NCBI GenBank assembly: GCA_950097015.1
Contig: CATNEN010000002.1
Location: 2,480,001-2,544,000, forward strand
Length of the DNA stretch: 64,000 nt
Direction of reading: 5' to 3'
Source: Macrostomum hystrix
Lineage: Eukaryota; Animalia; Platyhelminthes
Under the pieces are notes generated by a model. That model did no database searches and was not told the DNA's origin. It saw only the letters and a program-made list of their open reading frames with translations. The translations under genes and the position numbers were made by a program. Every line of letters begins with the position of its first letter. The first letter of the stretch is position 1. Below, one piece after another: positions 2,269 through 62,368 of the stretch.

Positions 2269-2634
2269 ACTCGGGTCTGCGACCTGGAAGCTGCCGGACA
2301 CAGTCTGAGTGACATCATGTCCATTACTGGCCAAACGTCAGAGAGAACAACCCGTCGCTATCTGGCGAGGCGGCGTGACCGTTCCCTACAGAAGAATAGT
2401 GCATCGGTTTCTTCTGCTCTTCAGTTGCGCTCTGATGAGGATGCTGTCGCCATCCCTGCTTCCGGTTCGGCTGTTGCTGAACAAGACGAGTCCGTCGCCA
2501 TCCCTGCTCCTGACTCGGATGCCACTATCTCCATCCAATCGGGCCTGTGCTTTACCGGCTTCAATAGTCACGACAACCGTGTGACTAAGTTCAGTTTCAA
2601 TGGATGCACGTTTAATCAGTGCAAGTTTAACTAA
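2269..2634 (+). pseudogene. C-terminal fragment of a related YR gene directly upstream of YR1 (copy at 39109-39474)
   Basis: TRVCDLEAAGHSLSDIMSITGQTSERTTRRY aligns with YR1 TRIADLRDNGHSLNDIMTITGQKSDRTVRCY. It ends in the family-type tail FSFNGCTFNQCKFN. Confidence 0.8.
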
Positions 2635-3022
2635 TTTTTACTAAAACTAAAACTTGTTTGTCATTTGTTAAGTTTAAACTATACGCGTTAACTTAAAAAA
2701 ATTATTCTAAAAATTCCAAACAATGACCGGTCATTGTATGAATGTCATTGCCTTGAATTAAATTACCATAGACATTTTGGACAATGACAACTTTGGTCTT
2801 TGCTTAACTCTGCCTACTGGATCTGTCATTACTTAATGCTACTAAAATTAGGCAACCAGTCGACCATAGACAAACTTTCAGGCTTTGCTGCAGTGGGCCA
2901 TAGACAAAGATTTAGGCCTTGATGTGACTGAAAAGTGCCATTTCAGCATCTCTTACAAAAAGCGATAAGACAGGAAAGAAAATTTACAGCCGCAAAATAT
3001 CAATTTCACTTAGTCAATATAT

Positions 3023-4287
3023 ATGGCTAAACATCATTTTATTAATTGGAGGAACTTGCCGGTGGATTCACTTGATGGAGTGACGCATGATGAGCTTCAA
3101 TCTTTTAATTCACTTTTCGCTGCTGACTGGAGTGCTGATGACGAACTGCCAAACTTTATCGATGCATTGACCAGTTCGGACAAAGGTTTTACGACTGGAG
3201 ACAACCTTCCTGAATTACCTGAACTAACAGCTGGTTTCGGTGACGTTGATTTAGATGCCGTTGAATTGTCGCCTCTTCCTCGAAGCTCGAGAGAACAAAT
3301 GAACAAGGCTGGCGAAGCATTTATGAAATTTTTGGAGACGCGATCCATTCAAAGCCCCAAGACATGCCAGTGGCAATGCTGAACGAATATCTGCGCTTTT
3401 TCTACTATACACTTAAGAAGACTGATGGTAGTTTGTATGCCCCCTCTAGCTTGGTATGCTGGAGGGCTGGGATCCAAAGGTACTTCAGCATAATACTAAA
3501 GCGTCCGCTTAATATCGTGTCTGGGTACTTTGATAGAACCACAGTCGAACGCCTACAGGACGAGGTGGTATTCACCATTCTCTATATTATTGGTGAAAGA
3601 GGACAAGAACACCTTAAGCATTTGAAACAGCAGGGAGCATTGGTTACTGGTATCGACTCCGACGGACATGAGTGCTATGAACTACCACCACTTCCAACTA
3701 AGAACCAATCGAGTGACCCAGTCAAGTGTAAAGACGACAGAACGAAGCAGGCGCGCATCTATGGAGAGCATCGTGAACTGATTGCTCTGTATGAGAGGTC
3801 TTTACCTACAGGGGTGAACAACGGTAGCTTTTTTCCGAAGCCTCTTTTGAACGATTCAGAAGGCAGGCCCCGTTTTTCTACGAATCAGGTGCGCGGAGTC
3901 AACTGGCTGGCGAATTTTATGCAGAGGGTGAGTCGTCTATGCAACTTGAGTAAAGTGTATAGTAATCACTGCATTCGCTTTACAAGGATCGCTGACCTGC
4001 GCGATAATGGTCATTCTTTGAACGATATTATGACTATTACTGGACAAAAGTCTGACAGGACTGTACGCTGCTACTTGTCTAGGCAGCGTGAAAGCACTGT
4101 CCGGAATGTGTCCATGACAGTCAGCAGGGCTCTTAAGCGGAAGGGCGAAGCGGAGACTGCGATCTCTACACTAACGAGTGTGTCAACTAATGCTACACAT
4201 GGACAGAAGGATGAAATGTTGGATAGGACACCGATCATTTTTGCCGGTTGCTCATTCCAGCTCTGTACTATTAACTTTACGAAGTGA
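3023..4287 (+). mobile_element. Crypton/DUF3504-type tyrosine recombinase gene YR1 (frameshift near 3360)
   Basis: N-terminal LNEYLRFFYYTLKKTDGSLYAPSSL..RAGIQRY; catalytic GERGQE (R), NHCIR (HxxR), ITGQKS...RCY (Y); C-terminal CSFQLCTINF. Two overlapping ORFs (3023-3382, 3364-4287). Confidence 0.85.
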
Positions 4288-5781: not shown

Positions 5782-8700
5782 TCAGAGTGGACTGTTAAGA
5801 ATAACTCCGAATAACGATCTCTCCACGTCCCAGTAGTTGCTCTTATATTCCGCCTTGCCGAGAGAGTTCTCAGCGGAGCACACGTAGGTGCCATACGCGT
5901 TGTCGCGGCCGATGTTCTCTGCAGTTGTGAAGGTGTCAAGCGATGAAAATTTGGGAGTCGAAATGCAGTGTCACTTCAGCCAACACCTTCTGACTAGTTT
6001 TCTCTAGAATATATTCTGTCTTAGACGGTTCTATTTCTTCGCGGTAATTCCATGGACTGCCCATACAATTTATAGCACACGGGAAACCCACTTTACGGAT
6101 GCTTTTCAACCAATGGGAAAACAGGAATCATTTTCTCTATTTGTCCCTATTTGTTAATGCGCATTAGATCATTCGGTGGAAATGGTGAAATTATATTTTA
6201 GAAAATTATGATACACATTTTTCTTTTGATAATTTCAACAGCCTCACAAGCTATATTTTGGCTTCCATCCATAGGAAGCCAAAATCAATATTAATCCCTC
6301 CATATTGATAAATATTTTATTAAGGCTATTAAAGCCTTATCCTCTTAAGTCCATGGACTGAGGGGGACGCCACACCACCCTCAATTGCCCCACCTAATGC
6401 TGGTACAATTAATACAAATGGATGAAGCGAAGCAATTTAAAGATAAGTGTATTGCTTATCTTTATAAGTTGTTCTCTCTTTAGAGTCTCTATCCCTGGAC
6501 TCTGATTTTATCAGGTTCTAAACCGGACTCTCTCGCTGGGGTCAGGAATCGAACTTCCGACCTTCAAGTCGAGAGCTTCACGCTCTAATCACAAGGCTTC
6601 AACCACACGCGCTGATTGGTTGAACCAATCAATCTAGATAAAACGAGTAACAAGTTCACAAACCTATCTACCAGCTATGTTACTTCCTTATCGCTCCTTT
6701 CCGATTGAGCAAGCGAGTTGATGTCCTTTCCTTACCTTTTGGTAGTCTGAAATGGAAGGGGTGTTAGAATAGCCTTTAGAATCTGTTTGTGTACTTCAAT
6801 TCATTAAACCACAATGCTTCTAAATCTAAACACTCACTTGTAAACTAGCTGCGACCCGTATCTGCCGGAGTCATTTTGGTCGAAAAAGGTCTTCTCATAC
6901 TGCCTGATCCACCTTGGGGTCTCCAGTTGAACATTGTCCGCGTCGCGCTTGGTAATATCCAGATCCGGGTACGGGTAGCCGGTAAAGAGGCATTCAAAAT
7001 AAATATCGCCTTCTTCCGTCTTCGTGATGTAAAAAATGCCGTAAGTCCCTTGCCTCAACTTGCCTTCGCCAGGTCGGGCTAAGGGGTCGAGGTTAAACGT
7101 ACTTTAGCTTGACTAACGCATTTAGGAATGTCAACTTAAGACTCCAGAATGGAGACCTATGGTCAATCATCGAACCAAATCAACTGAAATCAGCAGCTGG
7201 TCGATCCAGTTGACCCAGGGTACCCTGAAATAAAGCGAACCCTAATACTGAGCGAAACCCATTTCCCTGACTCCTGAGCACACAGCACACAGATAAAGTA
7301 CACAGACCCTGATTTCAGGTAAAGTACTATCTTACTGAACCTAAAGCTGGCCCTAAAGCGTGCCTACTGTACAGCTTTTACATCTTCCAGCAGAATCATG
7401 TTGCGCGAAAAGCTCTTACTTTGCATGAAAGCCTTGATGGGCACCGACTGAATAAGCAGATCTTCAACGCCCGATACGTTGATGAATGACCTGACGGCCA
7501 CGCACATGAAAATGCCCGAATCGCTCACGGAGCCAGTCTGCAGCGTCAGTGTCGCCTTGCCGCCCTCCAAACGCTTTTTCATGCCGGAAACCTCGGTGGC
7601 AGTGCCGGCTTCCCTCTCATCATAGAGGCACTTGTAGTTCTTGCACTTTTGTGGGTGTGTGTGTGATACAATGCTTGCAAAAATATTTAAAATAGAACGG
7701 CTATTTACAGGGCTCTCCAGTTTAACCTACCTTGACCCAGTCCAGGTAGCGATATGTTTCTGAATTTCTATCCACTTCTGCGTCGTAGTTCTGCAGAGTG
7801 CAGGTCAGCTCAATCGGTGGTCCATCGCGGCGCAAATCGACGATGTCCGGATTTCGAATGATCAGCGAAGAGTCATTCATTGTGACGACGATGTTGGGCC
7901 TCTCGGGAATCGCTGGAGAAAACGATGGTGTGCGAACATTATCTTAGTGGAAGGCTGGTGGGACTCCTTCTAAACCGGCCGATCTCTATCTGTACGGACT
8001 CACAGACTGGTTCTCTGACTCACTGCTTTGGTCTTTTCACTCACAAAGATTTAGTAGGCCTGTGCTTAGAGATTCAGGCACTAATCTGGAGGTCGGGAGT
8101 TCAAACATCAGCAAAGAAGAATTAATCTGTATTCTCGATTCGCAGCCAACGGAGAGACAATTCAGCACATTTCGCTGACTTCAGAACATGCACAGGTACA
8201 TGGATACTGTATACAGGCACAAAGTCACAGGTGATTGTATCTGTTTTGAATTTTCTTCAGGCAGTGTACACTCTCAATGTACCTTGGGGTTCGGCTCTCA
8301 AAGGCATAAATGGCACGACAAGCCCCGAAGCCTCGGAATCGAGCTCAGGGACATTGGTGCAGGATGGAAACTTATAACAAGTTTCTAGACCTATGTACAA
8401 GTCCTATCAACGATAGGAACGGCGATTCTGGTGTGGCCGTCAATGACAAAGGACGTGGAGGACTTCGTAGCAACGTGTGACAAGTGTCAGAAGACGGCTC
8501 GAATCCCGATCAGCCACCGGGTGCAGCTTGTGCTAGTGCCTCGAGTGGAGGAGGCCTTCACTAAAGTTATCATCGACCTAAGCGGGCCGTATCCAAGGAC
8601 GGCGAGCGGTCACCAGTACATCCTGTCAGTTATCGACGCGGTTTCCAGAAGGATTCCCTCTGCGTAAGATCGACGCGGAGTCGCAGGAACGAGAGCTAAA

Positions 8701-11700
8701 GCCCGTAGATCAGGTGCTGCTGCTGTTGCCATCGACAGCCAAGAAGCTCCCCGCTAAATGGCGCGGCCCCTATGAAGTACTGGATAAGTGCCGCGAGGTA
8801 AACTAGCGAATTCGGATTGGCTCGGCAACCAACACGTTCCACATCTGCTCAAGAAATACAACGCGCGACAGTCGATTCTGATGCAGCTGTCAGCGGCAAC
8901 GACGGGTGCTCCTGCGCTGTCCGACCGTCTGAGCCCGGACGAGAGGGACCGTCTCCAGCAGCTGGTGCTGGACTTCGCGAATGTCTTCAGTGAGATGCGG
9001 TGAAGCACCGAATCTGGACGACATCTGACCGCGTTGTGCGCATCCAGCCTCTGCGGGAGCTGCAGGCGCATCGATCAACAGGTGCTCCAACAGGAGTTCC
9101 AAAGCATGCTGGACCTCGAGTGATCGAACCGTCAGAAAGTGACTACTGTTCTTCTGTCTAGTGGCCAAGACGGACGACTCGGTCCGATTCACTGTCAACT
9201 TCAAGGTGCTGAATAAGCTGGTGGCTTTCGATTCCTACCCAATGAAGAACATCGAGGATCTGCTGGAGCGAGTCGCCAAGGCCAAGTTCATGTCTAAGCA
9301 AGGGCTACTGGCAGATTCCTCTGTCCGAGAACTCAAAGCGGCTGACGGCATTCGCGGCCGGTGGCAGGCTCTACCAATTCACCGTACACTCGTGTGTTTA
9401 AACGACAGAAGTGCAACGCGCCAGAGGGCTGGTCCAAACTGTTCCAAGGGCTGGGCAACGCAGACTCATGCCTCGACGACATTGCCATGTTCAGCGATCT
9501 TTGAACAGCACGTTCACGACCTGAGGGAGGTGTTAGGCCGTTTCCAGGCTGCCGTTCTGACGGTGCAGCCACGCAAATGCTACCTGGGCGGCAACTCGGG
9601 GGACTACCTCGGCTTCAAGCTCGGCGGAGGCCAGATCGGCACGAGCGAGGATCGAGTGCGGACTGCACAGGCTCGACCCCTGACTAAGGCCCAGCTGCGA
9701 TCAGTGCTCGGAGTGCTCAACCAATACCATCGGTTCGTGCCCGGCTACTCCGACAAGGTGGCAGCCCTGACGGACCTCACGAAGATGTCGGCGCCTGAGG
9801 ACCTAAGAGCGGCCTGGGGAGAACAACAGACTCGAGCCTTCCAGAAAGTGAAGTCTCTGCTGGCGAGCGAGCCGGTACTATGCGCGCCGGATTGCAGTCG
9901 GCCATTCATTCTGGAGACGGACAGCTCGGAGACCGGCATCAGCGCGGTGCTAACGCAAGAGTTCGAGGACGGCAACCATCCTGTGCTATTCGTGTCACGG
10001 CGTACCTGCAGATGGACCACACAAACCCGCGGCTCCAACGGTGGGCCTTCTATCTGTCTGGCTACGACTACGAGATCCGGTACTAGCCAGGCAGAAGCAA
10101 TACGGTGTCCGACGGTCTCAGCCGCATCTGGACTGATTGATTGACCAAATGATTTACTGACTGACTCAGGATTGAGTGACTGTCCACGTGATTTATTGTA
10201 CCAGACGGCTCAGTAACTGACTTTGCATTGCTGCTTGTTTAGTCGATTTTGCAGGACTGTGGGATCGATTGATTTGTAGTGTCTTAGTTTGACCATTTTA
10301 ACTCAAGTTTTACTGGTTCCTGCGATTCAATTCTGACTTGAATTATGGTCCGGATTCCTACTTGCGGTGCAGAAATTAACGTCAACTTTTTTGTACATGC
10401 CCGTGGAGTCGTTGCTATAAATAGATGTGTGGTGTGCTCAGAGGCGGTTTGGGCCTCCCTGGCTCAACTTGGAACCTGTGAATCGTGTGTCGATCATTCT
10501 TACTGGGATCAAAGAATGCAACAAAGTGAAAACGTCATTATTTGATATTACTGCTCGAAGTAAAAACTACGTAAACAAACTTACAATCCGTCGACTCGGA
10601 GCTCATGTTGATCGACTTGGTTTCGTGCGCAACGTCGTTTTTCGCATTGCAAGTGAAGGGCACTTGGTGTACCTGCTTGTCCATAATAAACGTAATGTTC
10701 GCGTAGCTTCGGATTCCGATCTGACCCTCGTCAGCCAACTGTTAAAATAAATTCGGAATGTGTGAAGCTAGTCAAAAAGCTACATTGAATTTTGAGGCTT
10801 TCGCAGTGCACCACACTGACAGGGACAAATGTGGAACAGTAATACAACCTGGAGGGAGTTTGCCTGTGCAAGCATCCGTGTCGACTGATGCACAGTCTGT
10901 CTGTCTACTGCCCGTGGGGGGTTAGAGGCAGAGCGGTAGCGGTCTAACGCATTTGCCACTCGCACCAAGGTCCCTGAGCTCGATTCCGCGGCGAGGCCAC
11001 ATTCATTTGGGGCGCAGCCGCAGAGGATGCCCTTGAGGGCCAGCCTCCGAGGCACAGTGAGAGTATACACTGCCTGACGATAAGAAATTCAAGGCGATGT
11101 ACACACCTGTGTGGGCGTGTGCATGCGCTGTCTGTGTCTGTGTGCTTGTGTGCTCAGGAGTCAGCGGAACGGGCAGAATTGCCTCCTCGCTTGCTGCAGG
11201 TATAGTGTGATTAAATTATATGCTATTGTTTGCAGCCCTCCTGCAATTAATATAATAATAATAATTATTATTATTATTGTTGTTGCTTTTATGATTAATT
11301 GTGCATCCTAAACGCATTTTTTACTGGCGGTGAGTCGAATGTCATCAATTTTGTACAAAATAATTTCAATACTTCAAGATCCAGAACACTTACAACCACG
11401 CCAGGAACGCTTGTGGCATTCTTCCCCAGAACATCCCACCAGACCTTGGCTGGCGGCACAGCGTTTTCATCGTAGCAATACAACCACTGACGCCTGCGAT
11501 CGATGAAAGTCTTCTCCGCCATGATGTATTTCGGTACGGGCTTCCCTGAAGGTGTAAATCGAAGCGAAGAGTGCCTATAACAAATACTATATGCTTCAAA
11601 ACTGCCTAGCCAGGGCCACAAGTTTTTTCGTTCGGCTGAAGCTCGAACTCCAAACCTCATAGTAAGAAATTCGAAGCTCTAACCATTGAGCTAAAGCCAC

Positions 11701-18203: not shown

Positions 18204-19884
18204 CACACTGCTGAGGTGGAGAGCGAGGCGACAACCAATAGAGCGAGTGCTTCGCTGGTCGCTATTGGCTGGAGCTAAGGCATGCGCATCAGGAATATCT
18301 GGAGTCGAGTTCAACCCTCTTGTTGAGTGAAGCGCACTGGTCTGCGCCCGGTGGAGTTTTAGTCCATTTGTAAAAGTGGATTCAAAACTAACCATCTGAA
18401 GTGTTTTGTTATGTCTGACCTATTAGAGCACTAAAACAAATACATTACTGAATTTTAGATGCACTGGAATCGAGGAAAATATGTGAAACTCTTTCTCAGC
18501 TAAGAGCTCATCATTTGAATATTCGATCAAAGTACGAATAATGAAATTTATCGTAATACTGCGCGTTAAAACGTGTACAAGGGTACGATATAAAAAATGT
18601 AAATACCCCCATAGTTTAACTAATTAATCTATTATAAGGCCATGAATATTTTTTTTGTTTACATTAATTGGAGCCTCAATTCAACAAATTTTATCTCCTC
18701 ATTAAACATAAGATCGCTTCATCATCAAGCCTTATAAACGCAACAACAACAAAAACAAAAATATACGCCCGAGTTAGAGATAAGAAGGCAAGTTTCAAGG
18801 CCTGGGCGCGCACATAGGCAAGGTCTCTGGCAGTGTCCGGGGCGCCGGCGTCGGCAAAAGGGGAGTCGACGTACCGCCGAGTTCGTGCCTACCCACGCCG
18901 AAATTAAGTGGGGCCTGCAGCAGGCTGGGGCAGTGCTCCTCGGCACGGATGAGGTGGCCTTCCAGCTGTAGTCGCCGACGGCGCAGTAGGTCGCTTGGGT
19001 GTGCCAGGCCGGCGCGGCGATAAAGTGCCGCCTTGGTGATGAGCTCATCAAAGCCGATTCTAAAGGCAGCGCGAAGCAGGCCAGCCTGCGCTGCGTTGAC
19101 TTGACGCTGACATTACATATGCCTATGCCTAAAAATGTCATGGCTGAAAGAATCGACGAGAAGGCCAATAAGCAGTCTTGATATGAATTCCACAAAGGAT
19201 TATAAGCAAAGGAGAGTTGCCTTGCCAGAGACGTGCGTATTGAGTTGACAACTAGCCGTGAGCTTGAGGTATAGCCACAAGCGAGATCGGCTTTACAACG
19301 ACGATCGTGTTTTTCTACTTTTTTACCTCCTGGGACTACTACTCGTAAATGCAAAATAGTATTTAGTACAGCCCTGCAATGTAATAAATGCCTTTTAAGC
19401 CGAATGGAAATAATATCCACAGGAGAAACATATTCCTCATTTGAGATTGACGATGCCTGCTAGCAATCGGCATGCACAAATGCTTAAGTATTATGGCAAG
19501 AATGGCAACGCCATAATGTTTCCGAAAATGCTTATTCTCAGAATCTGCAGTGTGGGAAAAGGCTGTGGAACGAATTAGCTTAATAATGCAACTTTGCTTT
19601 ACGTTCATAGAAAATTAATTAATTCAGGACCACATCAGTTCTTTTATTTGAGCCAAAAATGATATATTGTGTTGTTTTACTTATTAGTATGAATAAAATG
19701 TAAACTTTGAGCAATTCTATTCTTGTCCAAAGGATGGAGAATCAGGGAAACTGTTATTTTTGGGGACAGTTACGATTCTAGGAGCTATGGGGAGCTTGTA
19801 GCTGCAAGGATAAATCTGTGCATTTACGAAGGTTGTCACTCTGTAAACCAATGCTACCCTTCTGATAAATCATAATAACCCTCC

Positions 19885-20870
19885 ATAACTCATGCTAACC
19901 CTCGACATATCATGCTACCCCTCCATATATCATGCTACCCCTCGATATATCATGCTAACCCTCGATATATCATGCTACCCCTCGATATATCATGCTACCC
20001 CTCGATATATCATGCTAACCCTCGATATATCATGCTAACCCTCGATATATCATGCTAACCCTCGATATATCATGCTACCCCTCGATATATCATGCTACCC
20101 CTCGATATATCATGCTAACCCTCGATATATCATGCTACCCCTCGATATATCATGCTACCCCTCGATATATCATGCTACCCCTCGATATATCATGCTAACC
20201 CTCGATATATCATGCTACCCCTCGATATATCATGCTACCCCTCGATATATCATGCTAACCCTCGATATATCATGCTACCCCTCGATATATCATGCTACCC
20301 CTCGATATATCATGCTACCCCTCGATATATCATGCTACCCCTCGACATATCATGCTACCCCTCCATATATCATGCTACCCCTCGATATATCATGCTACCC
20401 CTCGATATATCATGCTACCCCTCGATATATCATGCTACCCCTCGAAAGCTTATGCTGTCCGCTCAGTTATTCATGCTATCCTTTCGATAATTTGCAGTCC
20501 ACTTAAAGAATTTGTGCTACCACATCGATAGATAATGCTGCTTCCCGATAAATCATGCTACTTCTCGATAATAAATTACGCTACCCCTCAATAAATCAAG
20601 CTACCCCTCAATAGTTCATGCTACCCCTCAATAAATCATGCTACCCCTCAATAGTTCATGCTACCCCTCAATAGTTCATGCTACCCCTCAATAGTTCATG
20701 CTACCCCTCAATAGTTCATGCTACCCCTCAATAGTTCATGCTACCCCTCAATAGTTCATGCTACCCCTCAATAGTTCATGCTATCCCTCAATAGTTCATG
20801 CTATCCCTCAATAGTTCATGCTATCCCTCAATAGTTCATGCTATCCCTCAATAGTTCATGCTATCCCTCG
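19885..20870. repeat. 20-bp minisatellites CATGCTA(C/A)CCCTCGATATAT then CATGCTACCCCTCAATAGTT
   Basis: Two adjacent homogenised sub-arrays (19885-20445, 20575-20870). Confidence 0.95.
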
Positions 20871-22429
20871 ATAAAACACGCAACCCACTCGATAATTTGC
20901 ACCAAATTTCGTTAAATCATGCTTTCCCTCAAATATTTATGCTACCCCTCGACAATTTGCACAACACGTTGATAAATCATGCACCTTTTTTGACAATTCC
21001 TTCTTTTTCTTTCGAGAAGAAGATCTCGAAAATGTATGCCACCCCTGATAATTTGACTATACTTTCATAATCATTCTACCCCCTGGCTAAATCATGCTAC
21101 ACCTCAATAGATCATGCAACTATCTGAAAAGTTTATGCAACACCATCGATTGTTTATGCTTTTGCCATTTACTTGATATCTCACGCCTGTTATCCATGGC
21201 AATCTAGCGCTATGTCTTAGATTTTTTCAGTTTTTATTCTATATTTTTTGCTTCGTGTTTTCTTCGAAAAAAGCTTTTGAAATATTGAAAACATATTCGT
21301 AACTGTCCTGCTTAAAAACACGCAAATTCTAAAAAAGAGTAAAGATTCAGCTATGAATAAAATAGCTGATGACAAATACAAGTACCTTGTCTTGAAATGA
21401 TTGTAGCAATGCTCAAAAAGTTTTCCTTTCGTTTTGAAAATAAAAAACGCTAACAGCAAGTATGCTCGAACAGTCTTCATATAGTTTTGAATTTAATCGA
21501 ATAGTGCTTGAAAGAATGCAATTAAAAACATAAAAATATCTCATGAAAAAAGCTTATTGCTTTGCTGAAAGCATTTTCTTTTATTTGTGAATAAAAGACG
21601 CTGGCAGCGAAAATTCTTTTCTCAGTTTTGTATCGAATAAGACATACGTCTGCAATCGAAAAAATTATTATTTTAACATTTTCTCAGAGCGAGAAGAATT
21701 ATTAAGCTGACAAACATTTGCCTCGACAGTAGCTAATCAAAAGCGCTTACTATTCTCAGGTAACTGTACCCAAAAAGCCCAATAAAGAAAAAATTAGAAT
21801 GATCTGTTATCTACATTTTTAACTGTTGATAATAAAATATTATCACCAGTTCCAATAAAATTCGGAGCTAAATGAAAAGAAAACGACACAATGATCAAAG
21901 TCGAGACGATTTTTGAAGATATATTGACTGCAGTTTTCAGGGAAAGAAAGGAGGAGGAGAGGTCTGACTAAAATTGAGACATACGAAAGTCAAAGATCTG
22001 TACAATTTACAGAAGTTTTTTTCAATATGTCAATAAAAATAAAGTTTACCCTTTCGATGAAACATGCTACCTCTCTATAATTCATGCTACTCGTCCGATA
22101 GTCCATAATCACTCCTCGATAATGTATGCTACCCCTTCAATAAATCATGCTCACCCTTGATTAGTCATGCTACCCCTTGATAAATCAAGCTCCATAAGAA
22201 GCAATAAATCATGCTATCCCTAGACAATTCATGCTTCCCTACCATGCTACATTTGTAAACATTGCAAATGCCTTGCGAATACAATTTTCTGAAGCGTATT
22301 TTATTTGCAACTAAATAGAAAAATATACATAGGATGGCACTATTTTGATGGATAGCATGGAAATGAAGGTTTAGACCGCAAGTTGTCAAGATAAAAAGTT
22401 GTTGTGTAAAGAATGGGAAGCATCAAATT

Positions 22430-24530
22430 ATCGAGGGGTTAGCTTGATATATCGAAGGACAGCATAAATTATCGATGGGACTGCATTAATCATCGATGGG
22501 ACAGCATTAATGATCGATGGGACAGCATGGATTATCGATAGGACAGCATGGATTATCGATGGGACAGCATTAATGATCGATGGGACAGCATGGATTATCG
22601 ATGGGACAGCATTAATGATCGATGGGACAGCATAAATTATCGATGGGACAGCATGGATTATCGATGGGACAGCATTATTGATCGATGGGACAGCATGGAT
22701 TATCGATGCGACAGCATGAATTATCGATGGGACAGCATGGATTATCGATGGGACAGCATTAATGATCGATGGGACAGCATGGATTATCGATGGGACAGCA
22801 TTAATGATCGATGGGACAGCATGGATTATCGATGGGACAGCATTAATGATCGATGGGACAGCATGGATTATCGATGGGACAGCATGGATTATCGATGGGA
22901 CAGCATGAATTATCGATGGGACTGCATGGATTATCGATGGGACAGCATTAATGATCGATGGGACAGCATGAATTATCGATGGGACTGCATGGATTATCGA
23001 TGGGACAGCATTAATGATCGATGGGACAGCATGGATTATCGATGGGACAGCATTAATGATCGATGGGACAGCATAGATTATCGATGGGACAGCATTAATA
23101 ATCGATGTGACAGCATGGATTATCGATGGGACAGCATGGATTATCGATGGGACAGCATGGATTATCGATGGGACAGCATTAATGATCGATGGGACAGCAT
23201 GGATTATCGATGGGACAGCATTAATGATCGATGGGAAAGCATGGATTATCGATAGGACAGCATTAATGATCGATGGGACAGCATGGATTATCGATGGGAC
23301 AGCATTAATGATCGATGGGACAGCATGGATTATCGATGGGACAGCATGGATTATCGATGGGACAGCATTAATGATCGATGGGACAGCATGGATTATCGAT
23401 GGGACAACATTAATGATCGATGGGACAGCATGGATTATCGATGGGACAGCATTAATGATCGATGGGACAGCATGGATTATCGATGGGACAGCATTAATGA
23501 TCGATGGGACAGCATGGATTATCGATGGGACAGCATGGATTATCGATGGGACAGCATGAATTATCGATGGGACAGCATGAATTATCGATGGGACTGCATG
23601 GATTATCGATGGGACAGCATTAATGATCGATGGGACAGCATGAATTATCGATGGGACTGCATGGATTATCGATGGGACAGCATTAATGATCGATGGGACA
23701 GCATGGATTATCGATGGGACAGCATGAATTATCGATGGGACAGCATAAATTATCGACGGGACAGCATGAATTATCGATGGGACAGCATGAATTATCGATG
23801 GGACAGCATGGATTATCGATGGGACAGCATTAATGATCGATGGGACAGCATAGATTATCGATGGGACAGCATGGATTATCGATGGGACAGCATGGATTAT
23901 CGATGGGACAGCATTAATGATCGATGGGACAGCATGGATTATCGATGGGACAGCATGGATTATCGATGGGACAGCATGAATTATCGATGGGACTGCATGG
24001 ATTATCGATGGGACAGCATTAATGATCGATGGGACAGCATGAATTATCGATGGGACTGCATGGATTATCGATGGGACAGCATTAATGATCGATGGGACAG
24101 CATGGATTATCGATGGGACAGCATTAATGATCGATGGGACAGCATGAATTATCGATGGGACAGCATAAATTATCGACGGGACAGCATGGATTATCGATGG
24201 GACAGCATTAATGATCGATGGGACAGCATGGATTATCGATGGGACAGCATGGATTATCGATGGGACAGCATGAATTATCGATGGGACAGCATGGATTATC
24301 GATGGGACAGCATTAATGATCGATGGGACAGCATGAATTATCGATGGGACAGCATGGATTATCGATGGTACAGCATTAATGATCGATGGGACAGCATGGA
24401 TTATCGATGGGACAGCATGGATTATCGATGGGACAGCATGAACTATCGATGGGACTGCATGGATTATCGATGGGACAGCATTAATGATCGATGGGACAGC
24501 ATAAATTCTCGACGGGACAGCATTAATTAT
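22430..24530. repeat. 21-bp minisatellite CGATGGGACAGCAT(GGATTAT/TAATGAT), about 100 units
   Basis: Tandem array with variant units in recurring higher-order blocks. Confidence 0.96.
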
Positions 24531-24924
24531 CGAGGAGTCAACAAAAGTTATCAAAGGGTCAGCATTATCATGAAAGATGACATCAAAGTTCGCCTACCCA
24601 CCTCAAGACCATACCTTGCCTGCTCTACCGGCCGCGAAGGATATTCTCGCTCCTCGCGCCTACCTCTCTCCTCTCAAAATGTACCAGAAGACGTTTTTGG
24701 TTCTTTTAAAACTTGTTCAACATCGCAGCTAAAAACCGACTTAAGCGCGGCCTGTTTATTAGTTTGTTTGTTTGTCCCTGATGGTCTCAATCTTTTGCAG
24801 ACAAAACTGCGCGTGTGTGCGCTGGTCGCTGTAGTGAGCCAGAGTGAGGAGCTCCTCCAGATCCGGGTCGTTTTGCAGCTCTGACAGCCACGCATCAAAG
24901 TCGATGCCTTCAGCAGACCTCCTT

Positions 24925-25275
24925 AGGGTCTCCAGTTGAACATTGTCCGCGTCGCGCCTGATAATATCCAGATCCGGGTACGGGTAGCCGGTAAAGATGC
25001 ATTTGAAATCCAAGTCGCCGGTGTCCGTCTTCGTGATGAATATCCTGCCGTTAATCCCCCAATCGTCGCCTTCGCCAGGTCGGGCTATGGGGTCGAGGTT
25101 AAACGTACTTTAGCTTGACTAACGCATTTAGGGATGTCAACTTAAGACTCCAGAATGGAGACCTATGGTCAATCATCGAACCAAATCAACTGAAATCAGC
25201 AGCTGGTTGATCCAGTTGACCCCTGAAATAAAGCGAACCCTAATTCTGAGCGATCCTGAGCACAAAGTACACAGA
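24925..25275 (-). pseudogene. Orphan fragment of a fourth paralogue (5' part of the RPGE Ig exon plus upstream intron)
   Basis: RPGEGDDWGINGRIFITKTDTGDLDFKCIFTGYPYPDLDIIRRDADNVQLET matches exon 7078-6838. The adjacent intron matches 7080-7300. The exon breaks off at about 24925. Confidence 0.85.
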
Positions 25276-25571
25276 TAATCAGTGCGGAGCCGCTCAGCTT
25301 GCAGGCTCCAGATCAGTCAGCGGAAGTTCACGTACAGGTAAGATGCCCGAGGATGGGACAGTCTGGCTGTGAGCAAAGTCCGCGTGAACTCGGGAATGAA
25401 CGGAAAGCTCGGTGGAGTGTCGGCCGGGAGGCAGAACCTCCACGCCCAGTCCGAGTCAGTTCGATCGATGTCTCGGTCGCCTTTGAAGTCGCTCGAGTTT
25501 TTGACGTGACCAAGAGTGATAGAACCGTTGGAGTTAGGGCCGCTGCTTGCCACGCTGCTTGGCCAGGTGGC

Positions 25572-25630
25572 AGGGCCCGGGTTAGGTTCAATGCCGGCGA
25601 GAGGCAAAAGCAAGCGGATCAGAGAAGCCG
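25572..25630 (-). other. 2A-like ribosome-skipping peptide motif in a retroelement relic
   Basis: SLIRLLLPLAGIEPNPGP: a hydrophobic run followed by xIExNPGP. Confidence 0.6.
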
Positions 25631-25774
25631 GCCGTCGCTGATCCGCGAACGAAAAAACACAGAAAGCCGAGGTTCCCGAGAGAGAAGGTAGTGGCCGTGC
25701 GGGCATTGAAGGAGGTTCTGCAGCTCTTGGCCACCTTGGTGGGTGGAACCGCGACAAAGACGCGGCTGCAGCTT

Positions 25775-35092: not shown

Positions 35093-36577
35093 ATGGGCCA
35101 GCCAGCAGTTGTCCTGGCCTGCCTATTCCTTGGCCTTCTGTTGTCGCCAATGAGCGCTTGTCCAAAACTTGCTCAAGATCCGGCCGTCAACGACCCCATT
35201 CAAATTAGTACGTTCTGTTGTTATTCACAATAGCTTCCGATTACTGGCAAGTTTTTTCTGTCTTCAATTTTCAGCCGTGACAGTCGAACCGTCACAGTTC
35301 GCCGGGTTCAAATTGGTGAACTGCACTCATGATGTGCGCCTCCGAGACCTCAAGTTTCACGTTAGCAATGAGCGCAATGATCCCATCGGGCCGCCGGAGG
35401 ATCCGTACTTCAATATTACCTCTACCCTGCGCACCTTCTATCACAAACCAATTTGGAATAGGAGTACGGATGCGAATACGAATCACTGGTACAGGTGTTC
35501 TGGTGTGGATCCGTCTGGCACAAGGAGATACTCGAATCCTGTACCGATTGTTAAGGTCCCACGTGAGTTTTGTTCATGAGATGCACGTATATGCAACGCA
35601 TTAGTTTTAGTACGTTTTGATAGAAAATACATTAGAAGCGATAATAGTTGTTAATCTAAAGCCCTGCACACACGGGCTTGTACAAGTAACGCGCAAGTAA
35701 CGCGCAAATAGATTCCCCCTTTGAGGGAGGGACGGAGTAAAGGAGAACTAGCTTTGAAGCCCTGACAAAATTACGAATTCCGAGTTCATTGGTGCTATTA
35801 TCAATGGACCAGTTGAAACCGTCGGCATTTTATATTTATAACCTTTAATGGAGTAGCACGTTTCATAATTTAAAATGAATAAAATATATATTTTTATTTT
35901 TGCTGCTAGCAATAGGTAACTTCAGGATTTCAGGATTTATACAATTCTCTAATGCAAATCGCACTTGTCCGAAATCATATACTGACTTTTCACTTTTTTC
36001 TCCTAATCGCATTTTAACTTTTGAATAAGAAATACTTAGTTTTGATAGTCTAACTCAACCCCTCATAAAAATGTCTCTGTAAAAATTCGGATCCTCAGAC
36101 GATCCACTGCAGCTGAAGATCATCGTGAAAGACACTTACGGCATGATGTACAAAGTGCAAAACGACAGCCTCGCGGTGACCGACACTGTCTACTCTCCGA
36201 TGGACTGGTTCTGGTGGACTGGTGCCGGCTACTATGACCCGAATGTGACCATATACTGCCAAATGACTGGAAATCCGTACGGCACGGACCTGGAGCTGGT
36301 GCACGATGATCCATACACATCGTCGGACGTGCCTGAAGTAATAAAGCAATGCGACAATATGCAGGTAGCGGCGAACATTGTCTACTGTCGGGTGCCAAGC
36401 TACGATAGGTACGCCGATTACCAATGGCAGTGCCGAGCTAAACAACAGAATCCTGAGACCAAAGCCGTGACATCCTACACAAAAAAGCTCGACTTTGTGA
36501 AAGTGCAGTCGAAAATCCGCATTCGCATGAAGTATTACAAGTGGTACAGCTTCAATAACCGCTACCTCACGTTCTAA
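35093..36577 (+). CDS. Gene B: truncated paralogue, signal peptide plus 2 Ig-like domains (293 aa)
   Basis: Exons 35093-35207, 35275-35562, 36099-36577. Exons 1-2 are homologous to gene A exons 1-2; exon 3 is homologous to 46727-46200. TAA at 36575 corresponds to TAC in gene C, and the ancestral GTAAG donor survives at 36628. Confidence 0.75.
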
Positions 36578-41128: not shown

Positions 41129-44100
41129 TGCTCTAATTGTCTCGATTACAATGGCTAGACACTTTGTTTTATTGTTTATAACCATGTTTTCAAGTTCTCT
41201 TGCTATAACATTATAATAAATATAGCTCTTTGCAGACCATTTGATCCTTCCAGCATTCGATTTAATCCACAGTGGCAAAATCCAAACGTTTCAGGCCGAT
41301 TTTCAAGTTTTCTATGGCCAAAAGTATGACCATAGAGCAATCGATTTGATCCTTCGGACACGCATTTAAGCCTCTCTCCACTGTTTAGTTGTTATTGTTT
41401 GCCCTAGAACACAGACTAGACGGTTATCATCAGACGTCAGAGAGCGAAGTAGCTAACACTATGTTCGACGAAGAAATTAAATATTAAATCTATGGGGCGG
41501 GACTAAATGCGTGTCCTGTATGTAGCAACTCCGATTGCGAGGCTCGCTCGGACGCCGGAATCTTGGCTAGCACTTCTGCTGAGTTCGATTTCCACTTGCG
41601 GGCTCGCATTCCAGCTCTTCTCTACTACTCGGACAGCTGCTCAAACAGTTGAATCGCTCTGCGTTCTTCTGCCGACTCCAACGTTCTGGGAGCTTTCTCC
41701 GGCTCCTCTTTGATCTCGCAGAATTTCTTTAGCATCTCCGCCACGTCTTCCTCGTGCGCGAAACTGAAGAATTCTTGCTGACCCTCAACCATGCTGTTCG
41801 CCGGCGCGAAATCCATCAGTACAACGCAGGTCCAGCCGATTGGTGTTAATCTTGCGACCGGTTCGCCTGGCAATCCGCGAAGCCTTCTGAACAGGCGGTG
41901 TTAGCTGGTGTTGGTGTTGTTGGCTAGTGGTGGTGGATTTAATAGAATAAACGTGAAGCTGTGAACAGGTGAACAGATACAAGCTGTGAACAGGTGAACA
42001 CATACAAGCTGTGAATAGGTGAACAGATACAAGCTGTGAATAGGTGAACAGATACAAATTGTGAACAGGTGAACGGATACAAGCTGTGAACAGGTGAACA
42101 TATACAAGCTGTGAACAGGTGAACGGATACAAGCTGTGAACATGTGAACACATACAAGCTGTGAACAGGTGAACACATACAAGCTGTGAACAGGTGAATA
42201 GCCTGCTGAAGTGGACATTGGTAATGGGCGAGGCTGCACAAGTCTGAATTTAGTCAGCAATTTTTGTCATTTTTCCTTCATAGTCCTGGCGAGGTTCTTG
42301 TCCAGGATGACTGTCGCAGGACCAAGAAATATCTAGCATCTATATTTAGTCGCGAATGTCAATTGGGGCCTAATGCGAATGGCGGTAGCAACAAGTTAGA
42401 TTTACTCATAAACAATCTCAAAAGCGTTTATTGATTGCTGCAAGAACTTTGTTGGCAACTTCAAACGCAGTTGTTTCGCTTAATTCATATTGCCTTAGAT
42501 TCAGATAATATATTTCATAATCAAAAAGTACCAGCCAATCAAATTTCAAATCGAGTACATGATGTAAAAGTATATTTCGTGCTACTTCGGTTTTCGTGTG
42601 TACTTTTCTTTATCAGCCAATCAGAGTCGGCTCTTCAGAATGACGCTCTCTCCGCGTCCCAGGTGCTCTTAAATTCCGCCTTGCCGAGAGAGTTCTGAGC
42701 GGAGCACACGTAGGTGCCATACGCGTTGTCGCGGCCGATGTTCTCTGCAGTTGTGAAGGTGTCAAGCGATGAAAATTCGGGAGTCAAAATGCAGTGTGTC
42801 ACTTCAGGCAACACCTTCTGACTAGCTTTCCTTAGAATATATTCTGGCTTAGATAAATGAATTCTAGTGTCACTATTGACTTTGTGCTTGCTAGGCGATT
42901 CTATTTCTTCGCGGAAATTCCATGGACTGCCCATACTATTTTTAGCACACGGAAAACCTACTTACGTGATGTCTTTCAGCCAATGGGAAAACAGGAATCA
43001 TTTCTCTTTTCCCGTATTGATACCGTTTTTTACTTTTGATTATTTCAACAGCCTCACAAGCTATATTTTGGCTTCTCTATTGAGTATTTTTCCACAAATA
43101 TCACCCATAACCAATAATAATAATGAATAATATTTTATTAAGGCTATTAAGGCCTTATACTATTAAGGTTCGTCGGTCGTTCAGTCCATGGACTGGGGAG
43201 ACGCCACACCACCTTCAGTTACCCCACCTAATGCTGGTACCCATGTAACAAATGTATGAAGTGAAGCAATTTAAAGATAATTGTATTGCTAAAGAACACA
43301 AATTGTTCGCTAATGGAGTCGGGAATTGAACTTCAGACCTTTAAGTCGAGATTTTCACGCTCTAATCACAAGGCTTCAATCACACGCCTTGATCGGTTGA
43401 ACCAATCAATCTAGATAAGAACGAGAAATAAGTTTAAAAATCTATCTACCAGCTATATTACTTCCTCAACGCTCCTTTCCGATTGAGCAAGCGAGTTGAT
43501 GTCCTTTCCTTACCTTTTGGTAGTCTGAAATGGAAGGGGTGTTAGAATAGCCTTTAGAATCTGTTTGTGTACTTCAATTCATTAAACCACAATGCTTCTA
43601 AATCTAAACACTCACTTGTAAACTAGCTGCCACCCGTATGTGTTGGAGCTCCAATTGCTGTAGTAGGCCTCCTCAAACTGCCTGATCCACCTTGGGGTCT
43701 CCAGTTGAACATTGTCCGCGTCGCGCTTGGTAATATCCAGATCCGGGTACGGGTAGCCGGTAACGATGCATTTGAAATAAATGTCGCCTTTGCCGGTCTT
43801 TGTGATGAATATCCTGCCGTTACTCTCCCGATAGTCGCATTCGCCAGGTCGGGCTAAGGGGTCGAGGTTAAACGTACGTTAGCCCGACTAACGCACTTAG
43901 GGATGTCAACTTAAGACTCCAGAATGGAGACCTATGGTCAATCATCGAACCAAATCAACTGAAATCAGCAGCTGGTCGATATAGTTGACCCAGAGTATCC
44001 CCAGGGTACCCTGAAATAAAGCGAACCCTAGGACTGAGCGAAACCCATTTCCCTGACTCCTGAGCACACAGTACACAGATGATGTACACAGACCCTGATT

Positions 44101-55465: not shown

Positions 55466-56149
55466 GTGTCAACTCCACTGGCGAGACAGTTAGTGCGAAT
55501 TTATAAATATGTTACATCACAGCTTTTCTCACCTGTGTGTGTGTGTGTGTGTGTTAGAATTGAATTGGTAAAATGTGCAAAGCAGACTTCAATTCAATGA
55601 TATATTGCTCAATGCTAGCGAGCCCTCCAATTGGCTGAACTATTGATCCACTCGCTCGCTCAACCCAGCCTTATCACACTAACACTCTTACCCCAGTTCG
55701 GACCTCCTCCTCGCGGTCTGTGGTTAGCCGCTGCAATGTCCACAAATGTACAAATATAACCAGACGAAAACCAGTAGTTTACCCCATGTCACTTGATTGA
55801 CACATTTTTGCAAATAATAACTGCCACTTTCTTAGCCCGTTACTAAACTGAAAGTAGGACAACCATTACTGTGGGTGGAAGTAAATTTTCCATTGATGTA
55901 AATTAACAATGATAAACCATTAATTATCGAAGTAAAGCATCAATTATCGAGGTGTTAGCATGAAGTTTTAATAGGGAAGGAAAATTTATCGAGAGGAAGG
56001 CATGAATTAGCGACGAAAAAAGAAATCGTCTAAGGGGAGCATAATTTATCGAGGAGTATTGGAAATTGTCGAAGGGTAGCAGAAATTTTTTAGGGAAAGC
56101 GATTTATCGACATGTAGTGCAAGTTATCGAGCGGGTTGCATAAATTATC

Positions 56150-62241: not shown

Positions 62242-62368
62242 GATCTGTCATTACTTAATGCTACTAAAATTAGGCAACCAGTCGACATAGACAAACTTTC
62301 AGGCTTTGCTGCAGTGGGCCATAGACAAAGATTTAGGCCTTGATGTGACTCGTACTTATAACAAGTTT

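What the first reader, a model, noticed from the sequence alone, without database searches (positions are those of the whole stretch)
6838..7078. Three-way hypervariable patches in one Ig exon
After RPGE, gene A has GKLRQGTYGIFY, gene C has CDYRESNGRIF and the orphan has GDDWGINGRIF. The central TGYPYPDLDI..RDADNVQLET is almost invariant. A second patch differs as YEKTFFDQNDSGRYGS (A) vs FEEAYYSNWSSNTYGW (C). Indels in the patches keep the frame. This framework-plus-variable-loop pattern recalls recognition proteins (inference).
Basis: partly seen in the sequence, partly recalled or inferred. Interest (0 to 1): 0.75.

Follow-up and report, generated by a model that had tools for sequence, protein, structure and literature searches.

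The report
Patchy-variable Ig exon in flatworm gene array
In the flatworm Macrostomum hystrix, ten nearby copies of one exon from the last immunoglobulin-like domain of a large secreted protein are almost identical, introns included, except for two short stretches; one of those changes amino acids far faster than silent sites, which suggests selection for different binding surfaces, but function is untested.

Summary
Exon 6838-7078 (minus strand) has ten copies in the genome, all on one contig. Three are in this window.

The exon encodes strands A to E of the C-terminal Ig domain of a laminin-B/EGF/Ig (perlecan-like) gene. Its only clear relative is a Macrostomum lignano "Ig-like domain-containing" protein.

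- **Variable sites:** 64 of 132 nt in the patches, 2 of 81 in the core, 50 of 564 in flanking introns.
- **Fixed differences between the two main exon types:** found only in patch 1, patch 2 and one intronic island.
- **Gene conversion:** the flank tree contradicts the exon-type tree (AU p=0.02). The "invariant framework" therefore largely reflects DNA-level homogenisation or recent duplication. It does not by itself show a rigid scaffold.
- **Patch 2 (D strand and D-E turn):** omega about 11 (p=0.003).
- **Patch 1:** omega 1.7 (not significant) with raised silent divergence.
- **Not decay:** the frame is open in all nine full copies.

Both AlphaFold runs failed (pLDDT about 40), so exposure is unproven. 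The patches do not appear to be CDR-like loops. The splice into the last exon is unresolved, and gene A may be damaged there.

Verdict: a plausible new case of a known pattern, diversifying selection working against concerted evolution.

The parts
6838..7078 (-). Focal exon of gene A (A-type). It is 241 nt, with a phase-1 acceptor and a phase-2 donor, and encodes strands A to E of the last Ig domain.
   Evidence: The orthologous stretch is M. lignano P0001 residues 477-556.
6981..7064 (-). Patch 1 (codons 5-32): N-terminal segment, A' strand, A'B turn and most of the B strand. It has 4-5 sequence types, one 3-nt indel and charge reversals.
   Evidence: 44 of 84 nt are variable, by codon position 17/11/16. 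There are 15 fixed A/C differences. Omega is 1.7, p=0.15.
6900..6980 (-). Core (codons 33-59: GYPYPDLDITKRDADNVQLETPRWIRQ): BC turn and C and C' strands. It is nearly identical at the DNA level in all copies.
   Evidence: 2 of 81 nt are variable and none is silent. There are no fixed differences.
6852..6899 (-). Patch 2 (codons 60-75): D strand, D-E turn and start of the E strand. There are two main types, and each keeps an N-x-S sequon, shifted by one residue.
   Evidence: 20 of 48 nt are variable, by codon position 8/9/3. There are 17 fixed A/C differences. Omega is 11, p=0.003.
43616..43853 (-). The same exon in gene C (C-type, 238 nt). It carries private G-to-C and S-to-W changes.
24918..25084 (-). 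Orphan copy: the first ~167 nt of the exon only, with the acceptor changed to atag. After ...ETLR it is fused to a repeat-element ORF.
7420..7645 (-). Exon -1: second half of the preceding Ig domain. Used as a control.
   Evidence: Omega for exon -2 plus exon -1 is 1.27 (not significant).
7731..7912 (-). Exon -2: first half of the preceding Ig domain. It has in-frame indels in loops among the copies.
5785..5919 (-). Ig-frame part of the last coding exon (ENIGRDNAYGTYVCSAENSLGK... up to the stop): F and G strands. Its 5' boundary is unresolved.
   Evidence: Weak I-set match to profile positions 68-85. 65% identical to P0001 residues 559-594. Phase problem described.
6201..6500 (.). Intronic island of type-specific divergence, with about 31 fixed A/C differences in about 261 aligned nt. 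It is non-coding as far as seen.

Best explanation
**What it is**
- The exon encodes strands A to E of the C-terminal Ig domain of a large secreted laminin-EGF / laminin-B / multi-Ig (perlecan-like) protein.
- In Macrostomum hystrix the gene has multiplied into an array. Nine full copies of the exon and one broken copy lie within 1.15 Mb of one contig.

**How the pattern arose**
- Array members exchange sequence by gene conversion or recent block duplication. Introns, neighbouring exons and the exon's centre carry no type-specific differences.
- Two short coding stretches and one intronic block stay type-specific.
- Patch 2 (D strand and D-E turn) has gained amino-acid changes about 11 times faster than silent changes. 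It has about 3 times more fixed differences than the unhomogenised intronic block.
- I read this as positive, diversifying selection that also keeps the exon types from being homogenised.
- Patch 1 (N-terminal segment, A', A'B turn, B) exists in 4-5 types with charge reversals. It cannot be told apart statistically from old neutral divergence.

**Shown:** copy number, clustering, mosaic ancestry, open frames, and omega above 1 for patch 2 and for the whole exon.

**Inferred:** the varied residues form a binding surface, mainly the A-B-E-D sheet side and the N-terminal tip, and the paralogues differ in binding specificity. The ligand is unknown.
For: - **Copies:** ten copies, all on contig C2 between 2.46 and 3.62 Mb.
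- **Ig identity:** profile hits to M. lignano A0A1I8GQH7 (E=2e-26) and to Ig proteins. Pfam Ig_3 matches residues 497-578 of that protein, and I-set also scores. The DCC Ig alignment covers the B strand and BC turn.
- **Gene context:** EGF_laminin, Laminin_B and Ig. tblastn of M. lignano P0005 and P0001 gives a collinear exon map.
- **Clustering:** Fisher p=2e-23.
- **Rate:** tree length per nt is 0.73 in the patches, 0.11 in introns and 0.14 in control exons.
- **Fixed A/C differences:** only in patch 1 (15), patch 2 (17) and intron 6201-6500 (31) across about 3 kb.
- **Conversion:** the flank tree rejects monophyly of the A type (AU p=0.021), while the patch tree splits the types with 100% bootstrap.
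- **Omega:** patch 2 is 11 (p=0.003), both patches together 2.7 (p=0.004), the whole exon 2.8 (p=0.002).
- **Patch 2 against the intronic island:** 17 of 48 against 31 of 261 fixed differences, p=1.5e-4.
- **Not decay:** no stops among about 97 patch substitutions (5.2 expected, P=0.005), and only the coding frame is open in all nine copies. All indels in this exon and the preceding exons are multiples of 3.
Against: - Patch 1 has omega 1.7 (p=0.15). Its silent divergence is far above intron level (p=2e-4 against a 5% baseline) and fits an older baseline of about 15%.
- An intronic island shows that type-specific blocks can persist without coding selection.
- Neighbouring exons have omega about 1.3. 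Part of the family may be under relaxed constraint.
- There are only 7 distinct sequences, the patches were delimited after seeing the data, and multi-nucleotide changes inflate omega.
- There is no usable 3D model (pLDDT 40 and 38).
- Gene A has no canonical in-frame acceptor into the F-G exon and carries a 2-nt slip there.
- Genes A and C lack modules present in the M. lignano gene.
- There are no expression data.
Confidence: 0.5

Rival explanations
1. Neutral mosaic. The A and C exon types are old paralogous lineages with at least 11-15% neutral divergence. Gene conversion has homogenised most of the locus. The patches are simply tracts not yet converted, perhaps protected by their own divergence or by indels, and no selection for diversity is involved.
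For: - An intronic island (6201-6500) carries 31 fixed differences.
- Patch 1 omega is not significant and its silent sites are elevated.
- Tree discordance shows that conversion is active.
- Control exons have omega about 1.3.
Against: - Patch 2 has omega 11 (p=0.003). Its density of fixed differences is 3 times that of the intronic island (p=1.5e-4).
- Silent positions interspersed within patch 2 are almost all conserved; third codon positions vary at 3 of 16.
- Each type shares a different subset of patch residues with M. lignano, which fits change in both lineages.
Confidence: 0.28
2. Mutational artefact. A few complex events, such as multi-nucleotide mutations, error-prone repair or short templated replacements, rewrote the two stretches. 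The resulting dense, mostly amino-acid-changing differences mimic positive selection.
For: - Many codons have 2-3 adjacent changes, for example GAC to AGC twice and GGC to AAC.
- Patch 1 has an indel and is hard to align codon by codon.
Against: - No donor sequence exists elsewhere in the genome; protein and DNA searches find only the 10 copies.
- The frame and the strand-like pattern are kept (F/Y and T/A swaps in the strand, radical changes in the turn, sequon retained).
- There are no stops (P=0.005).
- Graded intermediates exist, such as L007 and L008 in patch 1 and L007 in patch 2.
Confidence: 0.1
3. Decay of redundant or partial gene copies. The paralogues are pseudogenes or fragments drifting without constraint.
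For: - Gene A lacks the modules matching P0001 residues 97-337 and has a 2-nt slip before the last exon.
- Gene C has only the last third of the gene within the window, behind an LTR element.
- The orphan copy is a broken fragment.
Against: - Drift cannot make the patches 6-7 times more divergent than the introns.
- The frame is open in 9 of 9 copies, splice sites are intact, and all indels are in frame.
Confidence: 0.07
4. Assembly artefact, such as haplotypes placed in tandem or chimeric joins.
For: Two pairs of copies are identical (L003 with L004, and L008 with L009), 25-32 kb apart.
Against: - The A and C types sit in different neighbourhoods on one long contig.
- The published assembly was purged of haplotigs and is reported as largely haploid with high base accuracy (PMC10468722).
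- Each exon type recurs in several copies.
Confidence: 0.03

Closest known systems
MHC class I/II and similar multigene families, in which diversifying or balancing selection holds against intron homogenisation
   Same: Variation is concentrated in short coding stretches with dN above dS, while introns and the rest of the exon are homogenised by recombination or gene conversion. Exon-type trees and flank trees disagree.
   Different: The protein is unrelated: a laminin-B/EGF/multi-Ig extracellular protein. The variable residues have not been shown to touch a ligand. The variation is between tandem paralogues in one inbred genome, not a demonstrated polymorphism.
Amphioxus VCBPs and snail FREPs, which are diversified invertebrate IgSF recognition proteins (comparison from my own knowledge, not tested here)
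   Same: Germline-encoded IgSF genes in multigene families, with hypervariation in part of one Ig domain. In VCBPs that part lies at the N-terminal end rather than in classical CDRs.
   Different: There is no chitin-binding or fibrinogen domain and no V-set signature. No evidence of immune expression or of differences between individuals is available here.
Dscam1 alternative half-Ig exons
   Same: The variable unit is an exon that encodes part of an Ig domain, and the variants differ in a defined patch.
   Different: The copies are not clustered alternative exons inside one gene. They lie at least 18 kb apart, each within its own gene copy, so there is no mutually exclusive splicing array.
Perlecan (HSPG2), domains III and IV
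   Same: Laminin-type EGF and laminin B modules are followed by a run of Ig domains.
   Different: No SEA, LDLa or C-terminal LamG/EGF modules were detected. The protein ends with the variable Ig domain. The family is lineage-specific, and its only clear relative is in M. lignano.
Macrostomum lignano A0A1I8GQH7 and BOX15_Mlig028090g1
   Same: The exon order is collinear and identity is 50-86% across all exons in the tblastn hits. The focal exon is about 57-62% identical, and the core motif GYPYPDL and the end RYGSQLVYK are kept.
   Different: Only one version was found in public M. lignano proteins. Its patches mix A-like and C-like residues. The last ~260 residues of that model are read-through into a repeat element.

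Membership tests
Immunoglobulin superfamily domain (I-set-like) | B-strand cysteine followed by a G-x-P-x-P BC turn | tested here: met
   The exon reads ...FECLFTGYPYPD.... A profile of the exon aligns this stretch to DCC Ig domains at E=0.006.
Immunoglobulin superfamily domain (I-set-like) | F-strand motif G-x-Y-x-C with the second cysteine, followed by the A-x-N-x-x-G motif | tested here: met
   The next exon reads YGTYVCSAENSLGK. It gives a weak I-set match to profile positions 68-85, and the orthologue matches I-set at residues 569-587. Splice continuity in the window is not shown.
Immunoglobulin superfamily domain (I-set-like) | Conserved tryptophan in the C strand | tested here: not met
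   The aligned C strand is DLDITKRD, with no tryptophan. The only W lies later, in PRWIRQ.
Immunoglobulin superfamily domain (I-set-like) | Pfam score above the gathering threshold | tested here: inconclusive
   The exon alone gives no hit at E up to 10. The orthologue P0001 scores 25.8 bits for I-set (cut-off 23.7) and 27 bits for Ig_3 (cut-off 30) over residues 497-578.
Immunoglobulin superfamily domain (I-set-like) | Two-sheet beta-sandwich fold | tested here: inconclusive
   AlphaFold2 gave pLDDT 40 for the exon alone and 38 for P0001. Only strands A', B, D and E were predicted.
Perlecan / HSPG2 | Laminin B and laminin-type EGF modules followed by Ig repeats | tested here: met
   Laminin_B at E=3e-8, EGF_laminin at E=5e-5 and Ig_3 at E=1e-9 in upstream exons. 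The P0005 domain list agrees.
Perlecan / HSPG2 | SEA and LDLa modules at the N-terminus and LamG/EGF modules at the C-terminus | tested here: not met
   None appear among the Pfam hits for the window exons tested or in the precomputed list for P0005. The protein ends just after the focal Ig domain. Not every ORF in the window was scanned.
Gene family under diversifying selection with concerted evolution (MHC-like pattern) | Variation clustered in short stretches | tested here: met
Gene family under diversifying selection with concerted evolution (MHC-like pattern) | dN above dS in the variable stretches | tested here: inconclusive
   Met for patch 2 (omega 11, p=0.003) and for the whole exon (omega 2.8, p=0.002). 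Not met for patch 1 (omega 1.7, p=0.15).
Gene family under diversifying selection with concerted evolution (MHC-like pattern) | Flanks homogenised, and flank phylogeny discordant with the variable part | tested here: met
   (AU p=0.021).
Gene family under diversifying selection with concerted evolution (MHC-like pattern) | Variable residues lie on a ligand-contact surface | not testable with these tools
   There is no confident model and no known ligand.
Dscam-type mutually exclusive exon array | Variant exons clustered within one gene between constant exons | tested here: not met
   The copies lie 18 kb to 1.15 Mb apart, each with its own flanking exons.
V-set (antigen-receptor-like) domain | V-set profile match and variability in the BC, C'C'' and FG loops | tested here: not met
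   The exon gives no V-set hit. The alignment to a Fab VH is only at E=0.25. The BC turn is invariant.

The most novel reading that the evidence does not exclude
The array is a germline repertoire of variant C-terminal Ig domains on an extracellular matrix-type protein. Two surface patches are kept different by selection and are moved between array members by gene conversion. This would give the flatworm a set of distinct binding specificities, for immune, gamete or tissue recognition. It would be one of several such repertoires in M. hystrix, where other notes of this scan report the same pattern of near-identical DNA around hypervariable patches in unrelated families.
Probability: 0.2. Interest if true: 0.7.

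Novelty: new member of a known kind. Interest (0 to 1): 0.42.

Why it matters
Diversified IgSF recognition families are known in snails, amphioxus and arthropods. I found none described in free-living flatworms: one literature search on Macrostomum, immunoglobulin and positive selection returned nothing relevant.

If the patch differences change binding, this array would be a tractable example of how selection preserves specificity-determining stretches of 16-28 codons inside genes that are otherwise being homogenised. The species has a good genome and RNA-seq resources.

The case also carries a caution. An "invariant framework" between young paralogues can be produced by concerted evolution at the DNA level, so it is weak evidence for a scaffold-and-loop design.

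Tried and rejected
- **Pfam on the three exon peptides:** no hit at E up to 10.
- **Word-index protein search with the exon:** no candidates.
- **A second word-index search** with M. lignano P0001 residues 345-600: only P0001 and P0005.
- **AlphaFold2 on the exon alignment:** pLDDT 40.
- **AlphaFold2 on P0001 with exon fragments as alignment rows:** pLDDT 38. No 3D mapping or fold search was attempted on such models.
- **Patch donor cassettes elsewhere in the genome:** none. Protein and DNA searches find only the ten copies.
- **A tRNA-like stretch at about 6520-6600 in the intron:** negative with ARAGORN and Rfam.
- **Locus of P0001:** not on record.
- **Literature searches** on Macrostomum, immunoglobulin and positive selection, and on Mlig028090: nothing relevant.
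- **An in-frame canonical splice from the phase-2 donor into the F-G exon of gene A:** none found. The strong acceptor ctgcag|AG at 5919/5918 is phase 1. A conserved ctag| acceptor at 5994/5993 is phase 2, but gene A has a 2-nt (AC) slip after it.
- **L008 downstream region:** it did not help, because a mariner-like transposase ORF follows the exon there.
- **Rejected:** a wrong reading frame, compensated frameshifts as the source of the patches (the differences are substitutions at fixed length), and simple relaxed constraint (the patches exceed intron divergence 6-7 fold).
Exons were searched singly by reference, and the complete domain was examined only through the public M. lignano protein.
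Full report
**Source**

The window is G000:C2:2480001-2544000 of an assembly of 220,453,370 bases in 42 contigs. Those two figures are exactly the ones published for the Macrostomum hystrix assembly (PMC10468722). An earlier scan note had named this species, and the match confirms it. The sequence is not human.

**The observation**

tblastn finds the two other window copies at 43615-43875 and 24894-25106.

A six-frame search of the whole genome finds ten copies, all on contig C2 between 2.46 and 3.62 Mb. A DNA search finds the same ten and nothing else.
- Four copies are A-type: L001 (the window's gene A), L002, and the identical pair L003 and L004.
- Five are C-like: L005, L006 (the window's gene C), L007, and the identical pair L008 and L009.

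In the nine full copies the exon is 241 or 238 nt. The acceptor ttag|CC (phase 1) and donor AA|gtgagt (phase 2) are identical in all nine.

The orphan has atag at the acceptor. After ...QLETLR it runs into an unrelated ORF (...FDAWLSELQNDPDLEEL...) that belongs to a repeat element. The same element also makes up the last ~260 residues of the M. lignano gene model P0001. The orphan therefore has no patch 2.

**What the exon encodes**

Pfam finds nothing in the exon alone, and the word-index search found no candidate. A profile of seven copies searched against 1.84 billion representative proteins gave four hits:
- M. lignano A0A1I8GQH7, "Ig-like domain-containing protein" (P0001), E=2e-26, matching the full exon at residues 477-556.
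- A 4660-residue Helobdella Ig protein.
- An unrelated multi-domain protein with weak Ig-like matches (P0003).
- A protein with four Ig_3 domains.

In P0001, Pfam places Ig_3 at residues 497-578 and I-set at 569-587. That span covers the exon's counterpart and the next exon.

A PDB profile search aligns GDIYFEC..GYPYP to the B strand and BC turn of DCC Ig domains at E=0.006.

tblastn of P0001 and of M. lignano BOX15_Mlig028090g1 (P0005) lays out the genes. P0005 has 1298 residues with EGF_laminin, Laminin_B and many Ig domains.
- Gene A runs from 16920 to 5815 on the minus strand. It has laminin-EGF, laminin-B and Ig exons (Pfam) but lacks the modules matching P0001 residues 97-337.
- Gene C (48127-42617) has only the last third of the gene within the window.

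The focal exon is followed only by the F-G exon (GTYVCSAENSLGK...) and a stop a few codons later. The focal exon therefore encodes strands A to E of the C-terminal Ig domain of a perlecan-like protein.

**Where the variation lies**

The codon alignment shows variable sites as follows:

| Region | Variable nt |
|---|---|
| Patch 1 (codons 5-32) | 44 of 84 |
| Patch 2 (codons 60-75) | 20 of 48 |
| Core (codons 33-59) | 2 of 81 |
| Flanking introns | 24 of 287 and 26 of 277 |

Patches against introns give Fisher p=2e-23. Maximum-likelihood tree length per nucleotide is 0.73 in the patches, 0.11 in the introns and 0.14 in the two preceding exons. Simple loss of constraint cannot make the patches 6-7 times more divergent than introns.

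**Mosaic ancestry**

I compared the A-type copies (L001, L002, L003) with three C-like copies (L005, L006, L007) over about 3 kb. Fixed differences occur only in three places:
- patch 1, with 15;
- patch 2, with 17;
- an intronic block at window 6201-6500, with about 31 in 261 aligned nt.

Everywhere else the polymorphisms are shared across the types.

The maximum-likelihood tree of the flanks groups A-type L002 with its physical neighbours L008 and L009, and with L006 and L007. It rejects monophyly of the A type (delta lnL 23.9, AU p=0.021). The patch tree separates A from the rest with 100% bootstrap on a branch of 0.36 substitutions per site.

L001 and its neighbour L005 are 92-100% identical in 120-nt windows of the flanks on both sides of the exon, yet they differ by 27% in patch 1 and 38% in patch 2.

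Array members therefore exchange sequence, by gene conversion or block duplication, and the exon types persist through it.

The near-identity of the core is thus not evidence of a rigid protein framework. The core has no silent changes either. In M. lignano it differs at 8 of 27 residues and carries a 2-residue insertion. Its two variable sites out of 81 are compatible with ordinary purifying selection at intron-level divergence.

**Selection tests**

I used IQ-TREE with the GY+F1X4 codon model and a likelihood-ratio test against omega fixed at 1.

| Region | Omega | p |
|---|---|---|
| Patch 2 | 11 | 0.003 |
| Both patches | 2.7 | 0.004 |
| Whole exon | 2.8 | 0.002 |
| Patch 1 | 1.7 | 0.15 |
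| Control exons -2 and -1 | 1.27 | 0.45 |

- **Patch 2.** Third codon positions vary at only 3 of 16 codons, against 8 and 9 for first and second positions. Pairwise Nei-Gojobori estimates are dN about 0.65 and dS about 0.13. The density of fixed differences is 3 times that of the unhomogenised intronic island (p=1.5e-4).
- **Patch 1.** It varies equally at all codon positions (17/11/16). Its silent divergence (pS 0.13-0.5) is far above intron level (p=2e-4 for a 5% baseline) but fits the ~15% seen in the intronic island. Patch 1 could therefore be old divergence that escaped homogenisation.
- **Against decay.** About 97 substitutions in the patches created no stop (5.2 expected, P=0.005). Every indel in this exon and in the two preceding exons is a multiple of three.

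Caveats: there are seven distinct sequences, the patches were delimited after seeing the data, several codons carry adjacent multiple changes, and the exon was picked from a scan because it looked variable.

**Polarity**

In both patches the M. lignano sequence mixes A-like and C-like residues. In patch 2 it shares 7 of 16 residues with A and 9 of 16 with C, while A and C share only 5 of 16. This fits change in both lineages from an intermediate ancestor.

**Position on the fold**

Both AlphaFold2 jobs failed (mean pLDDT 40 and 38), so exposure is untested.

The following assignments rest on the low-confidence secondary structure of P0001 together with the I-set motifs, and are inference.
- Predicted strands are A' 489-494, B 500-505, D 535-543 and E 549-557.
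- Patch 1 covers the N-terminal segment, A', the A'B turn and B.
- Patch 2 covers D, the D-E turn and the start of E.
- The invariant part is the BC turn with strands C and C'.
- This points to the A-B-E-D sheet side and the N-terminal tip, not to CDR-like BC or FG loops.
- Within patch 2, strand positions show conservative swaps (F/Y, T/A) and the turn shows radical ones.
- Both types keep an N-x-S sequon in the turn, shifted by one residue, which would fit exposure.

**Unresolved: the 3' splice**

The donor is phase 2. The strong acceptor ctgcag|AG (5919/5918), just before ENIG..., is phase 1 for the Ig frame.

In six other copies the Ig frame stays open upstream and contains a conserved phase-2 acceptor, ctag| (window 5994/5993). 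In gene A a 2-nt (AC) slip at about 5968-5972 closes that frame.

In M. lignano the model joins ...LVYK directly to LPTENIG. Without RNA data I cannot say which junction is used in M. hystrix. The window's gene A may be defective at its very end.

**Verdict**

The sequence pattern is real and non-random. The exon belongs to an Ig domain. One patch shows a clear excess of amino-acid change and the other does not. The "framework" is largely the product of concerted evolution.

The "recognition protein" reading is a reasonable but untested inference. This is a new, lineage-specific instance of a known evolutionary pattern: diversifying selection resisting homogenisation in a tandem family.

Other notes of this scan report similar patterns in unrelated M. 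hystrix families. I did not test those.

Noticed in passing
window 5960-6000 and 5915-5925: Gene A has a 2-nt (AC) slip compared with six paralogues, between a conserved phase-2 acceptor (ctag|, 5994/5993) and the F-G coding part. The strong acceptor ctgcag| at 5919 is phase 1, while the focal exon's donor is phase 2. No canonical in-frame junction exists in gene A.
   Followed up: partly
window ~6020-6127 (minus strand); L002, L005, L006 and L007 downstream of the exon: In most paralogues the Ig frame of the last exon stays open 40-80 codons upstream. It includes a second F-G-like motif (GFPCAKNSMGSPW) and an in-frame 42-nt insertion in L005, L006 and L007. This may be a relic half-domain or an unannotated coding extension.
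   Followed up: partly
window 24768-25751: The orphan exon is fused to a repeat-element ORF (...DSDWAWRFCLP..., ...FDAWLSELQNDPDLEEL...). The same element forms residues ~600-862 of the UniProt M. lignano model A0A1I8GQH7, so that model's C-terminus is probably read-through into a repeat.
   Followed up: partly
window 22310-24554: About 100 tandem copies of a 21-nt unit, 87-94% alike. They are open on both strands: 708 aa on the minus strand, reading as AVPSIIH heptads, and 533 aa on the plus strand. The array lies just downstream of the orphan exon.
   Followed up: no
window 7731-7912, and the same exon in L002 and L005-L008: The preceding Ig domain also has in-frame indels and a small variable stretch in its loops. 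Examples are KD[TVN/IAD/IVD]SS against NDSS, VDRNSETY against MDINLDAY, and a 6-codon insertion in L007.
   Followed up: partly
window 48462-55465: A probable LTR retrotransposon sits upstream of gene C's first detectable exon. Its direct repeats at 48462-48802 and 55125-55465 are 98.8% identical and flank a 1856-aa ORF (49357-54927, minus strand).
   Followed up: no
window 8370-10016 and 62354-64000: A repeat with 99% identical copies and a 327-aa ORF (9161-10144) lies in gene A exactly where the modules matching M. lignano P0001 residues 97-337 are missing.
   Followed up: no
L008 (G000:C2:3361636-3364896), oriented positions 2431-3234: A mariner/Tc1-like transposase ORF (268 aa, ...DETWLHLDG...) follows the focal exon in L008 and L009 in place of the usual downstream intron and last exon.
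   Followed up: no
window 36083-36628 (plus strand): An inverted copy of the exon matching M. lignano P0005 residues 944-1127 lies on the opposite strand between the gene copies. This is another sign of rearrangement in the array.
   Followed up: no
window 19851-20950 and 56144-57936: Two further arrays of 20-nt tandem repeats.
   Followed up: no
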